Shown: piece after piece, positions 36,081 to 40,650 of the stretch
Numbering within the stretch: position 1 is the first letter of the stretch
How the letters are laid out: every line of letters begins with the position of its first letter
NCBI RefSeq assembly: GCF_001194135.2
Contig: NC_068982.1
Coordinates: 106,633,257 to 106,682,156, forward strand
From: Octopus bimaculoides
Taxonomy: Eukaryota
DNA: 48,900 bases
Direction of reading: 5' to 3'
The notes under the pieces: model-generated
What the model was told of the DNA's origin: nothing
Databases searched by the model: none
The model's input: the letters and a program-made list of their open reading frames with translations, nothing else
Made by a program: the position numbers and the translations under genes

Positions 36081-36351
36081 TTATTACTATTATTACTGCT
36101 CATGTGTCCATTGTGTGTTTATCTAAGAAATCATTACGATTCTTTCTTACAATTGTCTCTGTTAAATGGAAGGTGCCACCATTGATAATTCTAATTGCAT
36201 GAATGTGTGAAAGGTACATGGTACAATGAGTCTTTCTCCTTAAAAGAACATTGGAAGTAATAATCACGGGTACATTCATCGATGACTTGGTTTTCGGAAA
36301 ATGTTGCCACTACTCGTAAAAAGCTTCTATCTATACTGACTTCAGTTCAAA

Positions 36352-36493
36352 TATGTATGCAAGTCTGTATGAATGTATGTGTGTATATGTATGTATGAAT
36401 GTATGTGCGTGTATGTATGTATGTATGTGTATGTATATATGTGCGTATGTATGTATACGTGTATGTATGTGTTGCATTGTATTGTATGCATTG

Positions 36494-36527
<34 letters not shown>

Positions 36528-36658
36528 TGTATGTATGTATGTATGTATGTCATTATTCAGTTTTATTTCAAGACTTCTTGTCAATAGAGAAAGAAGCGGT
36601 TTCTAACCTAGATCCAAAGCCCCTTCATCGGAATTTCAACATCAACAACAGGGTATTT
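36352..36658 (-). mobile_element. 3'UTR-only RLE LINE remnant (36552-36658) with (CATA)n tail (36352-36550)
   Basis: Minus-strand GGGGCTTTGGATCTAGGTTAGAAACCGCTTCTTTC resembles GGAGCTTTGTATCTTTGTTTGAAACCAGCTCCTTC in the 3'UTR at 37205-37308. Confidence 0.7.
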
Positions 36659-36659
36659 T

Positions 36660-37145
36660 TGTATGTATGTGTGTATGTATGTATGTATGTATGTATGTAT
36701 GTATGTATGTATGTATGTATGTATGTATGTATANNNNNNNNNNATGTATGTATGTATGTATGTATGTATGTATGTATGTATGTATGTATGTATGTATGTA
36801 TACATGTTGACTTGTATGTTTTGTTTTCCGAATGTCTTCTCGTGCATATACTTGCATATCTAGACATACTTAAATGATAAACTTCTGGAAAGTTTTATAG
36901 ATTTTTACAGTTCCAGTGATGGATTGGATCTGTAGTCTTCGAATCAGCATTCTCCTTTCTGATTTTTGAGAAGCCTAATTTCACAATATTGGTATTTAGG
37001 TAGTGGGTTATATATCCCAGTGCCCCAATAATTACAGGTATAAACCTGAACTTGTAATCTGGATAGAGTAACTGCAGAATTCTCAATAATTCAGCGTAGG
37101 TATTCTCTTTTTCATTGATCTTCAGCTCTATGTTAACATCTGCTG
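36660..37145 (-). mobile_element. 5'-truncated RLE LINE (endonuclease C-terminus and UTR) with (CATA)n tail at 36660-36802
   Basis: EISCPADVNIELKINEKENTYAELLRILQLLYPDYKFRFIPVIIGALG...QIQSITGTVKIYKTFQKF. Confidence 0.93.
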
Positions 37146-39274
37146 GGCAGCTGATTTCATATGTATATATGTGTATATGTATGTATGTATTCTATGTATG
37201 TGTTTCTCCTCAGTATTTAATCATTTAAGTTCTTCTTCTGAAGAAGGAGCTGGTTTCAAACAAAGATACAAAGCTCCATCTTTGGAAATGTAGATAACGA
37301 AAACAATGTCACATTTTAAACCTGAGAAAAGTCTTGCATAGTTTTACTATTCCTCTCACAGATTGTATTTGTGGTGCGTGAATCAGTTGGCTGATTTCTT
37401 TTTCTGAAAATCCAAGATTATCAAAACTGACAGTTAGGCATTTAGGCATTTGTTAATGAAACCAAGTATTCCAATTATTATTGGTATAAATGTAAAATTT
37501 GTAATCTGGATATAGATGTTGGAGGGTCCGAAGCAGTTGTCCATAGTTATCCTGTTTCTCTTTGATTTTCAAAATAGATATTCCCGTCAGCAATACAGCT
37601 GACCTCTATGATGGTACATACTTTTTCTTGGTCATCCAAAACAGCAATATCCGACCTGTTATGCTTACATTTGACGGATATTTTGATGGGTATGTTCCAC
37701 CAGTATCCCTTGTGCTGGTATTTGTGTACGTATTACAATAACAGGGGGATTTTCTATATTTATTCCAGGACAGTCTTTTTTCCGAAGAGCATTGTATATT
37801 ATTTTTGCGATAACGTCATGTCGCATAGGGGGTAGTACCTTGATGACATTTTTGGGCATCTGCTAATCACATGTTTGATGTCTTTCACAGAAATGTGACA
37901 TAATCAACAGTTACGGTTGCATCTTGGAACTCCAAGGGCTTCACTGTCTCTTTTGTTGATTAGGTATTTAGTAGCAATCTCCTGTTCTTGGATTGCTAAT
38001 GTATAGTTTTCGAAGTGTGATGTGATGTAGCGGTCATTATTACAAGAGAAGCTTCGCTACATGTCAATGTTACCATCTTCTTCAAGTCTACGAGAAATAT
38101 ACCCATGCATGGTCTTTTCACTTCCAGGTCTTCTTTGAGATATGCCAGTCTAGCTGATTAAGGGTTGTACGGGAGGTCATCAGGAAGAGAGTACTTCCTG
38201 AGGAGTCCACTTCCAACAAGTAGGATATTGTTTTCTTCACTTTTCAGCTCTAAGTCAATATATTTATTTTAGCTGTTGTTCTTTAGCAAGTGCTCTCTGT
38301 GAGAGACCATGCAACACTCGAAGGTTGTCTGCACTGACCTCAAGCCCCCTACCTCAATTATCTGTTCTTAGGTAGAGCCTGTCGATATCACTCTTTTTGT
38401 GGAGATTTCCAGTTGATGTTAGAATCTTGCGGGTTTTAATGTCTATGGAGTGGATTTCTTCTAATGACCAGTCAAGTATCTCAAATGTTGGAATCAGCAC
38501 TGGTACTGCAAATGCATTGTAGGTTATAGTCTTGTAAGTGGAGAGTTCAGACTGCCATATTTTCCTTAGTTCTTTCAAATTTTAATTTAGTCACTTACAT
38601 ATATTCTGGAGTCTTTTCTGTCAGGCCAATGTACAGGGATGCCGATCCGACAGAGTTGTGTGATGGTGGTACTGGTGGTGTCACTTTGTTTACGTTCTTG
38701 CTGGTCTCAGTGTAAGTATTTCGCTCGTCTGGAATATTGTCGAGAATATGAGTAGTATTACAGGAACAGAATATCTATCGCGATTTGTAACAGCCATTTT
38801 CTGAGCGAAGAAAGACGCCAGTTGTCGCAGTTGTTTAGCTGTGAAGTGGCTTAAATTTGTGTAATATTCGTCACCATATTTCTTTAACCGCTTCATGTAG
38901 CAAATAGCGGGAACCTCTCGAAGAACATTGAAGAACATCCTGATTTAACTACAAAGACCAGGTGAAATGAGAAGGGTACTTATGTTTTCGAAGACAACTC
39001 ACACGAATGGTACTGGTTTTGCTGTCAGTATTGGTGGTATTGTTATTATTGGAGTCAGCCATGATTGTACAAGCGAAATTCCACTTGGATGAAAATATTT
39101 TTAAATTCTAATATGAATGACACTAAGTTGGTGAGTAAAAGACAGTTTAGATCGGCATAGTTGCAGGAGAAACGTTCAAAAACACATTTTATATGATCTT
39201 CTGCAGTCTGTCGCTGACAACCATATTAATGTATGTATGTATGTATGTATGTATGTATGTATGTATGTATGTAT
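37146..39274 (-). mobile_element. Internally deleted RLE LINE retaining its N-terminus and 3' end, flanked by (CATA)n on both sides
   Basis: (CATA)n at 39229-39274; ~165-nt leader; ATG at 39062 (MADSNNNNTT...FTWSL.LNQDV...YMKRLKK..LSHFTAKQLRQ); jump at ~38600 to ELRKIWQSELS..NAFAVPVLIPTF..DIKTRKIL..SDIDRLYL; TSHFENY.LAIQEQEIATKYL; CHISVKDIKHVISRC; RHD; HNRSDIAVLD..IIEVSC; stop at 37309; CATA-type tail at 37146-37204. No RT core motifs were found. Confidence 0.88.
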
Positions 39275-39489
39275 GCAATAGACAATGTTGAACATATTTG
39301 GACAAATAGTGACTGGTAGTAAGAAATGAGTATTCATCACAAGATTGTATTCAACGTCAAGGGATATCAAAATTCTCTTTACTTCTTTTTCTTTTACAGT
39401 CATTTTCATTTCGTGAAAATATAATTCGCCAAAATCTCGTTAAAACTGTCGATTATATTTTCTGATTGGATTTATTGATTGATTGATAT

Positions 39490-40442: not shown

Positions 40443-40650
40443 AGGACTGTGTGTGTAATATACAAGACTTTATTCAAATTCAAAATGTGACATTCTTTTT
40501 GTGATCTACATTTCAGCGACGGGCTTTGTAACTTTGTTAGAAACCAGTTCCTTCTTTACAAGAAGATTTCAAATGATTGAAAGCAAAAGGGAACATACAC
40601 ACACATACATACATACATACATACATACATACATACATACATACATACAT
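40443..40650 (+). mobile_element. Short 3' end of the (CATA)n-lineage RLE LINE with (CATA)n tail
   Basis: TTCAAAATGTGACATTCTTTTTGTGATCTACATTTC...GGGCTTTGTAACTTTGTTAGAAACCAGTTCCTTC aligns with the reverse complement of 37205-37320; tail at 40593-40650. Confidence 0.9.

What the first reader, a model, noticed from the sequence alone, without database searches (positions are those of the whole stretch)
36352..39274. An RLE retrotransposon lineage that appears to target, and end in, (CATA)n microsatellites
On the minus strand the order is (CATA)n - element - CATA-type tract - 5'-truncated element - (CATA)n - 3'UTR remnant - (CATA)n. These are three separate head-to-tail insertions, each bounded by the same tetranucleotide. 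Two more copies agree: 40443-40650 ends in (CATA)n, and 14225-14585 starts right after a CATA tract. Repeat at the 5' junction of truncated copies suggests a pre-existing target rather than only tail synthesis. Established: R4-clade Dong elements target (TAA)n. Inference: this divergent lineage (AIQEQEIxTKYL signature instead of AAQDQ) has switched to (CATA)n, and may both exploit and propagate the (TATG)n arrays that fill this genome. I do not know of a description, but I cannot check Repbase or Dfam.
Basis: partly seen in the sequence, partly recalled or inferred. Interest (0 to 1): 0.75.

Follow-up and report, generated by a model that had tools for sequence, protein, structure and literature searches.

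The report
Dong-like retrotransposons living in (CATA)n repeats
This octopus region holds several dead copies of a jumping gene that sits inside, and ends in, CATA-type simple repeats; intact relatives elsewhere show the same habit, so it is a real sister lineage of the known (TAA)n-specific Dong elements with a different repeat as its home.

Summary
On the minus strand, 39275-36366 reads: (CATA)12, element 1, a decayed CATA tract, 5'-truncated element 2, (CATA)n with the N gap, a 110-nt 3'UTR remnant, then (CATA)n.

Element 1 is not a plain copy. It keeps a genuine 5' end and N-terminus but has lost about 1.9 kb of reverse transcriptase.

Relatives at 31-57% amino-acid identity were fetched from unrelated assemblies. 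They include intact 1128-1151-aa ORFs and carry (ACAT)n on both sides (L006/L007, L011), upstream (L005) or as a tail (L001, L012, L015). Three relatives use (ACTT)n instead (L002, L003, L016).

All of these form one clade with 100% bootstrap support. It carries the AIQEQEI motif and is sister to (TAA)n-flanked Dong-like elements, which carry AAQDQ.

In the three cases that could be tested, the upstream array is not the tail of another copy of the element.

Not done:
- Repbase and Dfam could not be consulted.
- Placement against HERO and R4 reference sequences is open.
- The direction of the switch is unresolved.

Verdict: a new variant of a known kind, of moderate interest.

The parts
39229..39275 (-). 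Perfect (CATA)12 array directly upstream of element 1. The DNA further upstream is unique sequence, not a 3'UTR.
   Evidence: blastn of the element 3'UTR against 525 nt upstream finds only chance matches of 10 nt or less
37202..39228 (-). Element 1: a dead, internally deleted copy of about 2.0 kb. It has a 5'UTR (39228-39063), an ATG at 39062, the N-terminal domain (to 38798), and a deletion of about aa 110-735 (most of the RT). RT thumb, CCHC and RLE follow (38578-37312, with many stops and frameshifts). The stop is at 37311-37309 and the 3'UTR is 37308-37202.
   Evidence: three-frame translation; tblastn with P0041/P0004/P0007; N-terminal alignment A3
37160..37201 (-). Decayed CATA-type tract. 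It is the tail of element 1 and also the 5' flank of element 2.
36808..37158 (-). Element 2: a 5'-truncated copy of a second family. It has the C-terminal part of the RLE from EISCPADVN onward, then a 3'UTR of about 60 nt that is unlike element 1's.
   Evidence: tblastn P0007 aa 151-243 at 60%; only 72% over 79 nt to element 1
36661..36807 (-). (CATA)n array. It is the tail of element 2 and the 5' flank of the remnant. It holds the assembly gap 36734-36743, so its true length is unknown.
   Evidence: read test not possible
36551..36660 (-). A 110-nt 3'UTR remnant of the element-1 type (an extreme 5' truncation).
   Evidence: alignments A1 and A2, conserved core GG(A/G)GCTTTG..GAAACC..TTCT
36366..36550 (-). 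(CATA)13 followed by a decayed CATA-type tract. It is the tail of the remnant and the downstream end of the array.
40459..40650 (+). A separate 5'-truncated copy on the other strand: last codons plus 3'UTR (40459-40592), then a (CATA)n tail (40593-40650). Its 5' junction lies in (TG)n-like sequence, not CATA.
   Evidence: blastn 81.6% over 125 nt
14210..14613 (-). Fragment truncated at both ends (14585-14210), starting at AIQEQE right after an ACAT tract (14613-14586). The break point coincides with an internal ATACAT in element 1, which points to microhomology.
   Evidence: comparison with element 1 codons NYTLAIQEQE = aactatacattagca

Best explanation
These are copies of a Dong-like non-LTR retrotransposon lineage.

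Architecture: one ORF of about 1130-1160 aa. It has an N-terminal three-helix domain without zinc fingers, a reverse transcriptase, a CCHC knuckle and a C-terminal restriction-like endonuclease.

Habit: its genomic home and its 3' tail are both the tetranucleotide repeat (ACAT)n, which is the same repeat as (CATA)n.

Most likely mechanism, inferred by analogy with R2 and Dong and not shown here:
1. The protein nicks a (CATA)n array.
2. The (CAUA)n at the 3' end of the RNA pairs with the nicked (TATG)n strand and primes reverse transcription.
3. The new copy therefore splits the array and regrows a tail of variable length.
4. Each tail is a fresh target, which produces head-to-tail stacks like 39275-36366.
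5. 5' truncations join the upstream array, sometimes at internal ATACAT microhomology.

The window copies are all dead. Intact copies exist in other animals.
For: Anatomy in the window.

Relatives flanked by the same unit:
- L006/L007 carry an intact 1139-aa ORF found in four independent marine-biofilm assemblies. (ACAT)n lies on both sides, and unique sequence follows the tail.
- L011 has (ACAT)n on both sides.
- L005 has (ACAT)41 upstream.
- L001, L012 and L015 end in CATA tails.
- L002, L003 and L016 carry (ACTT)n or (ACTC)n on both sides.

Contrast group: relatives nearest P0061, P0060 and P0066 end in (AAT)n in 14 loci.

Phylogeny and motifs:
- The ACAT/ACTT clade has 100% bootstrap support.
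- AIQEQEI versus AAQDQ is diagnostic.
- CCHC, RHD, PD..D.N..K are invariant in 11 intact proteins.
- The RT matches solved R2 proteins at E = 9e-32.

Pre-existing target:
- The upstream arrays of window element 1, L002 and L003 are not preceded by the element's 3'UTR.
- The outer flanks of L002 are inverted repeats of each other, as if one locus had been split.

In-window control: (TAA)n-type Dong fragments show the same head-to-tail habit in (AAT)n.

Statistic: four of five 5' junctions abut a CATA tract, P about 5e-8.
Against: - No empty site was seen, so tail and target cannot be formally separated.
- Three of the four positive window junctions lie in one array and could come from template jumps.
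- The 40459 copy lacks CATA at its 5' end.
- Several metagenome contigs simply stop inside the repeat, so what lies beyond is unknown.
- The scaffold gap sits inside one array.
- No nicking or priming step is shown here. Neither the RNA-tail pairing nor the role of the N-terminal domain has been tested.
Confidence: 0.8

Rival explanations
1. Tail only. The reverse transcriptase makes or copies a (CATA)n tail, but insertion sites are not chosen. Upstream CATA arrays are then tails of earlier copies, or arise in one event when the enzyme jumps from the 5' end of one RNA to the tail of another.
For: The two internal junctions of the cluster (37201-37160 and 36807-36661) are tails of the copy upstream. 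The 40459 copy has no CATA at its 5' end. Template jumping by R2-type enzymes is established knowledge.
Against: The outermost array 39275-39229 and the upstream arrays of L002 and L003 are not preceded by any 3'UTR of the element. Seven independent full-length 5' ends abut the unit of their own tail, on the same strand: window element 1, L002, L003, L005, L006, L011 and L016. The unit changes together on both sides: ACAT with ACAT, ACTT with ACTT, AAT with AAT.
Confidence: 0.12
2. Passive accumulation or rearrangement. Copies and CATA arrays merely pile up together in a repeat-rich, low-recombination region, or unequal crossing-over between arrays built the stack. This was proposed for Drosophila Waldo-A/B near CA repeats (PMC3812793).
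For: The window is crowded with microsatellites, SINEs and other Dong fragments.
Against: Junctions are exact, to the base, at element termini. They are strand-specific and recur in unrelated assemblies and families. The three stacked copies differ in family and in truncation point, so they are not duplicates of one another.
Confidence: 0.05
3. Assembly artefact. A short-read scaffolder joined unrelated contigs that end in the same microsatellite, creating an apparent stack.
For: A 10-N gap lies inside the array at 36734-36743, and eight of ten gaps in the window abut simple repeats.
Against: Only one junction (element 2 to the remnant) depends on the join. Every element-to-repeat junction lies within contiguous sequence, and the same anatomy occurs in other assemblies.
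Confidence: 0.03

Closest known systems
Dong (Bombyx mori) and Dong-like elements of insects, molluscs and cnidarians; R4 clade, RepeatMasker class LINE/Dong-R4
   Same: One ORF with RT, CCHC and a C-terminal restriction-like endonuclease, and no N-terminal zinc finger. A microsatellite of one unit lies on both sides and forms the tail. Copies stack head to tail. They are full-length collinear at about 25-30% identity with (TAA)n-flanked relatives such as L010.
   Different: The repeat is (ACAT)n, or (ACTT)n in three relatives, not (TAA)n. The motif before the CCHC is AIQEQEI, not AAQDQ. The group forms a separate clade. The HDV-like 5' ribozyme published for Dong (PMC3774820), and found here in the (TAA)n relative L010 (40.2 bits, E = 0.013, below the gathering score), was not detected in this clade.
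Waldo (WaldoAg1/2, WaldoFs1; R1 clade)
   Same: Inserts in (ACAY)n microsatellites, which include ACAT (PMC3812793).
   Different: Waldo carries an N-terminal APE-type endonuclease and belongs to the R1 clade. The elements here have a C-terminal restriction-like endonuclease and no APE domain (Pfam). The shared repeat is convergence, not kinship.
Togen (fish, near NeSL) and microsatellite-specific HERO families
   Same: RLE-type non-LTR elements reported as specific for microsatellites: (TG)n for Togen, unit not stated for the leech HERO family (PMC4640811).
   Different: The repeat units differ. Kinship could not be tested because no reference sequences were available. A HERO placement of this clade is not excluded.
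R2 (28S rDNA-specific; solved structures 9nl3, 9dou, 9nl2, 8gh6)
   Same: RT core and C-terminal CCHC and RLE are recognisably homologous (E = 9e-32 to 1e-16). It is the mechanistic model for target-primed reverse transcription, with pairing between the RNA 3' end and the target.
   Different: R2 has N-terminal zinc fingers plus Myb and targets one site in 28S rDNA. The elements here have no CCHH motif in the first 420 aa and sit in a microsatellite.

Membership tests
RLE-type non-LTR retrotransposons (R2 group sensu Repbase: R2, R4/Dong, HERO, NeSL, CRE) | Reverse transcriptase followed by a CCHC knuckle and a C-terminal PD-(D/E)xK restriction-like endonuclease in one ORF, with no APE domain | tested here: met
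   RVT_1 and zf-RVT hits only, no Exo_endo_phos. CCHC, RHD, PD..D.N..K are invariant in 11 intact proteins. Homology to solved R2 proteins. The window copies keep these motifs in decayed form.
R4/Dong clade | RT phylogeny places it with Dong, R4 and Rex6 rather than HERO, NeSL, R2 or CRE | not testable with these tools
   No reference sequences for Dong, R4, Rex6, HERO or NeSL could be obtained: the paper supplements hold none and three protein searches returned no named reference. Partial evidence: when rooted on R2 fragments, the clade is sister to (TAA)n-flanked elements, one of which bears an HDV-like ribozyme.
R4/Dong clade | No N-terminal zinc finger; a divergent Myb/SANT-like domain near the N-terminus (PMC7998251) | tested here: inconclusive
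   No CCHH pattern in the first 420 aa of 16 proteins. There is a strongly conserved 80-aa N-terminal domain with invariant W17 and W48. AlphaFold2 predicts three helices at pLDDT 78.8. Foldseek against the PDB gave no significant match (best E = 1.6).
R4/Dong clade | HDV-like self-cleaving ribozyme at the 5' end (PMC3774820) | tested here: inconclusive
   The Rfam HDV model hits the 5' end of the (TAA)n relative L010 (RF00094, 40.2 bits, E = 0.013, below the gathering score). Nothing is found in L002, L005, L006 or the window. RNAalifold on six 5'UTRs gives no consensus structure. Such ribozymes are hard to detect by sequence.
Dong (in the strict sense) | Target and tail are (TAA)n | tested here: not met
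   Tails and flanks are (ACAT)n in the window and in L001, L005, L006, L011 and L012, and (ACTT)n in L002, L003 and L016. (AAT)n is found only in the sister group.
Microsatellite-specific non-LTR retrotransposons (criterion of Kojima and Fujiwara) | Multiple independent copies have the same repeat at both the 5' and the 3' junction | tested here: met
   Both junctions are seen in window element 1, L006/L007 and L011 for ACAT, and in L002, L003 and L016 for ACTT. Empty sites were not available.
Waldo (R1 clade, ACAY-specific) | N-terminal APE-type endonuclease | tested here: not met
   No APE domain in any full-length relative. The endonuclease is a C-terminal RLE.

The most novel reading that the evidence does not exclude
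The target of this clade may be set mainly by the repeat at the 3' end of its own RNA, through pairing with the nicked array, rather than by protein-DNA recognition. The lineage would then retarget by single-base steps in its tail.

Observations that fit:
- Every tail unit found in the clade is one substitution from another: ACAT, ACTT, ACTC, ACAG.
- Mixed arrays exist: ACTT with ACTC in L003, and (CATA)2(GACA)n in L015.
- The conserved N-terminal domain shows no residue that tracks ACAT versus ACTT.

If true, it would be a naturally RNA-programmable, repeat-seeking retrotransposon.
Probability: 0.3. Interest if true: 0.7.

Novelty: new variant of a known kind. Interest (0 to 1): 0.5.

Why it matters
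The published list of microsatellite-seeking retrotransposons is short. For RLE-type elements it is dominated by Dong with (TAA)n.

A deep, widespread sister clade with intact members, which uses (ACAT)n and has moved at least once to (ACTT)n, gives a natural series for asking how such elements choose and change their repeat. That question now bears on efforts to retarget R2-type enzymes.

It also explains part of the tetranucleotide repeat load and the assembly gaps in octopus genomes, where Dong-R4 elements are reported as recently active (PMC13282606).

Tried and rejected
No read test of the gap, no empty-site search and no RNA evidence were possible.
- Pfam on the decayed window translations gave nothing useful.
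- Rfam on the region gave only sub-threshold mir-297, mir-466 and mir-1277 hits on the (TATG)n arrays. These are low-complexity artefacts.
- The search for an HDV-like ribozyme or any conserved 5'UTR fold in the ACAT clade was negative.
- A three-sequence 3'UTR consensus fold is weak: -6.8 kcal/mol, with one compensatory pair.
- Foldseek on the N-terminal domain found no significant match.
- The Octopus bimaculoides locus L004 (P0019) holds one truncated copy without a 3' end, so it is uninformative.
- Paper supplements searched for reference RT sequences held none.
- Nine literature searches found no RLE element described in (ACAT)n or (ACTT)n. Subscription papers, Repbase Reports and Dfam are outside the library.
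- The sequence upstream of the 14613 tract is not an element 3'UTR.
- The idea that the two ACTT groups are sisters was rejected by the tree (0% bootstrap). The inner branching of clade A is poorly resolved.
Full report
**What is in the window**

Read on the minus strand, 39275-36366 is one stack:
- a perfect (CATA)12 at 39275-39229
- element 1 at 39228-37202
- a decayed CATA tract at 37201-37160
- element 2 at 37158-36808
- a long (CATA)n at 36807-36661, interrupted by ten N at 36743-36734
- a 110-nt remnant at 36660-36551
- (CATA)13 running into decayed CATA-type sequence, down to 36366

A script confirmed the tracts.

Two further copies lie elsewhere in the window:
- 40459-40592 on the plus strand is 81.6% identical to the end of element 1. 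A (CATA)n tail follows at 40593-40650.
- 14585-14210 on the minus strand begins at AIQEQE, right after an ACAT tract at 14613-14586.

**What the copies are**

Three-frame translation and tblastn with intact relatives show that element 1 carries the RT thumb, a CCHC knuckle and a restriction-like endonuclease, riddled with stops and frameshifts.

Its first 430 nt were not noise, contrary to my first impression. They align to the N-terminus of full-length relatives: P0041 aa 3-78 maps to 39017-38798 (alignment A3).

Element 1 is therefore an internally deleted copy of about 2.0 kb, against about 4.1 kb for L002. It has lost roughly aa 110-735 but keeps the true 5'UTR (166 nt) and the start codon. 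Its genuine 5' end abuts (CATA)12.

Element 2 is a 5'-truncated copy of a second family. It is 60% identical to P0007, only 72% identical to element 1 over 79 nt, and has its own 3'UTR of about 60 nt.

The remnant and the 40459 copy share element 1's 3'UTR core.

**The gap**

- Both sides of the gap are (TATG)n, and no frame crosses it.
- Every element-to-repeat junction lies inside contiguous sequence.
- Only the statement that element 2 and the remnant share one array depends on the scaffold join.
- Eight of the ten gaps in the window abut simple repeats. The gap most likely marks an array too long for the assembler.

**Is the association more than chance?**

Outside these copies, same-strand CATA tracts plus a 6-nt margin cover 1.0% of position-strand pairs. 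Four of five 5' junctions abut such a tract (P about 5e-8). Three of the four are in one stack, so this number overstates the independence.

The stronger evidence comes from elsewhere.

**Relatives**

Protein searches found only unnamed proteins from ENA, Logan and JGI assemblies, plus one Octopus bimaculoides entry (P0019). Fetching their contigs gave the following:

| Locus (protein) | Flanks seen |
|---|---|
| L006-L009 (P0045, intact 1139 aa, four independent marine-biofilm assemblies) | (ACAT)n on both sides; unique sequence after the tail in L006 |
| L011 (P0046, intact 1134 aa) | (ACAT)n on both sides |
| L005 (P0042, 1151 aa) | (ACAT)41 upstream |
| L001, L012, L015 | CATA tails; L015 reads (CATA)2(GACA)n |
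| L002, L003, L016 | (ACTT)n, or mixed (ACTT)/(ACTC)n, on both sides |

A scan of metagenome contigs, followed by a scripted survey, showed that relatives nearest P0061, P0060 and P0066 end in (AAT)n in 14 loci. The unit at the 5' flank always matches the unit of the tail.

**Target or tail?**

Three full-length copies have readable DNA beyond the upstream array: window element 1, L002 and L003. In all three, that DNA is unrelated to the element's own 3'UTR. The upstream array is therefore not a neighbour's tail.

In L002 the sequences just outside the two arrays are inverted repeats of each other (4081-4103 and 8580-8602, 87%), as if one pre-existing locus had been split.

The 14585 fragment breaks exactly where element 1 has an internal ATACAT. 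This is what microhomology joining to a CATA array would give.

This meets the criterion used in the field for microsatellite-specific elements. It is not proof, because no empty site was seen.

**Relationships**

- Neighbour-joining trees place every ACAT and ACTT member in one clade with 100% bootstrap support. The window copy is sister to P0007, also at 100%.
- Rooted on R2 fragments taken from PDB alignments, this clade is sister to the (TAA)n group. Monophyly of the (TAA)n group has only 56% support, so the direction of change is open.
- The two ACTT groups are not sisters (0% bootstrap), but the inner branches are weak.

**Membership in R4/Dong**

In favour:
- the shared domain order
- no N-terminal zinc finger
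- a conserved N-terminal domain predicted as three helices (pLDDT 78.8), as reported for Dong (PMC7998251)
- sisterhood to (TAA)n elements, one of which (L010) has an HDV-like ribozyme hit at its 5' junction, as published for Dong (PMC3774820)

Not shown:
- Foldseek gave no significant match for the N-terminal domain.
- No ribozyme or conserved 5' fold was found in the ACAT clade.
- No reference sequences for Dong, R4, Rex6 or HERO were available, so a HERO placement is not excluded. Some HERO families are microsatellite-specific (PMC4640811).

**How it most likely works (inferred, by analogy with R2 and Dong)**

1. The endonuclease nicks the array.
2. The (CAUA)n end of the RNA pairs with the (TATG)n strand and primes reverse transcription.
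3. The copy splits the array and regrows a tail.
4. Tails attract further copies, giving stacks.

The same habit is visible for (TAA)n-type Dong fragments in this window: the C-terminus at 18117-18368, then (AAT)28 at 18476-18561, then the next RT fragment at 18560-18787.

One observation is worth following. All tail units in the clade are one substitution apart (ACAT, ACTT, ACTC, ACAG), and the N-terminal domain shows no residue that tracks the unit. This fits a target set largely by the RNA tail.

**Known or new?**

- Reviews list Dong (TAA)n, Togen (TG)n, some HERO families, and the APE-type elements Waldo (ACAY)n, Mino, Kibi and Koshi (PMC3812793, PMC4640811).
- Dong's target is given as (TAA)n in most insects, molluscs and cnidarians (PMC7998251).
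- Octopus Dong-R4 families are catalogued as abundant and recently active, but their targets are not discussed (PMC13282606, PMC8967140).
- Nine searches found no RLE element described in (ACAT)n or (ACTT)n. Repbase, Dfam and subscription journals could not be consulted.

**Verdict**

I rate it a new variant of a known kind. Confidence that the lineage is (CATA)n-associated and inserts into such arrays is 0.8. Interest is 0.5.

Noticed in passing
window 16512-18787 (+), 21771-23075 (+), 29283-31776, 35812-36072 (-): The window is a graveyard of (TAA)n-type Dong fragments. At 18117-18368 a C-terminus is followed by (AAT)28 (18476-18561) and then by the next RT fragment (18560-18787). This is the same head-to-tail habit, in the classical Dong repeat.
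   Followed up: partly
window 35613-36109 (-): Just downstream of the CATA stack lies a 5'-truncated (TAA)n-type RLE fragment. It has a TAA-like tract at its 5' junction (36109-36086) and an (ATA)n tail (35640-35613), followed by (GAA)n.
   Followed up: partly
L001, L002, L003, L005, L006, L011, L012, L015, L016: Every tail unit in the clade is one substitution from another (ACAT, ACTT, ACTC, ACAG). Mixed arrays occur: ACTT with ACTC in L003, and (CATA)2(GACA)n in L015. The conserved N-terminal domain has no residue that tracks the unit.
   Followed up: partly
L002 4081-4103 and 8580-8602: The sequences just outside the two (ACTT)n arrays that flank the element are inverted repeats of each other (23 nt, 87%). 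The upstream side is a tandem 21-mer. It looks like one palindromic locus split by the insertion.
   Followed up: partly
L010 22-112: The 5' end of a (TAA)n-flanked relative from a Tara Oceans metagenome matches the HDV ribozyme model (RF00094, 40.2 bits, E = 0.013, below the gathering score), starting at the junction with (TAA)n. This agrees with the published Dong ribozyme.
   Followed up: partly
window 36409-36811, 39229-39281, 40589-40650; L005, L006, L001: Rfam mir-297, mir-466, mir-1277 and mir-3149 models give sub-threshold hits on every (TATG)n array. These are low-complexity artefacts, not microRNA genes.
   Followed up: yes
window 1929-2107, 3339-3355, 25307-25394: Several other TATG/TG/TA tracts lie inside or beside copies of the abundant tRNA-like octopus SINE. 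Much of the tetranucleotide repeat load here is therefore not attached to the RLE lineage; about 40% of CATA-tract bases are.
   Followed up: partly
window gaps at 10155, 18788, 24065, 25495, 28364, 36734, 42376, 42826: Eight of the ten assembly gaps abut simple repeats ((TA)n, (AAT)n, (TATG)n). Microsatellites, some of them element tails, are what break this assembly.
   Followed up: yes
L015 1-47: The contig begins with an untrimmed Nextera adapter sequence (…ctcgtgggctcggagatgtgtataagagacag).
   Followed up: no
L005 3-1928 (-): Upstream of the (ACAT)41 array lie genes with YqaJ exonuclease and SAP domains on the other strand. This may be another mobile element.
   Followed up: no
L006, L005, L011, L002 5' ends: Full-length copies from different families begin with a similar (T)GAC(A/G/T)(C/A/T)(C/T)(G) sequence right after the array. 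This suggests a defined RNA 5' end whose origin (promoter or ribozyme) is unknown. The window copy has about 16 extra nucleotides before a GACAGAC.
   Followed up: partly
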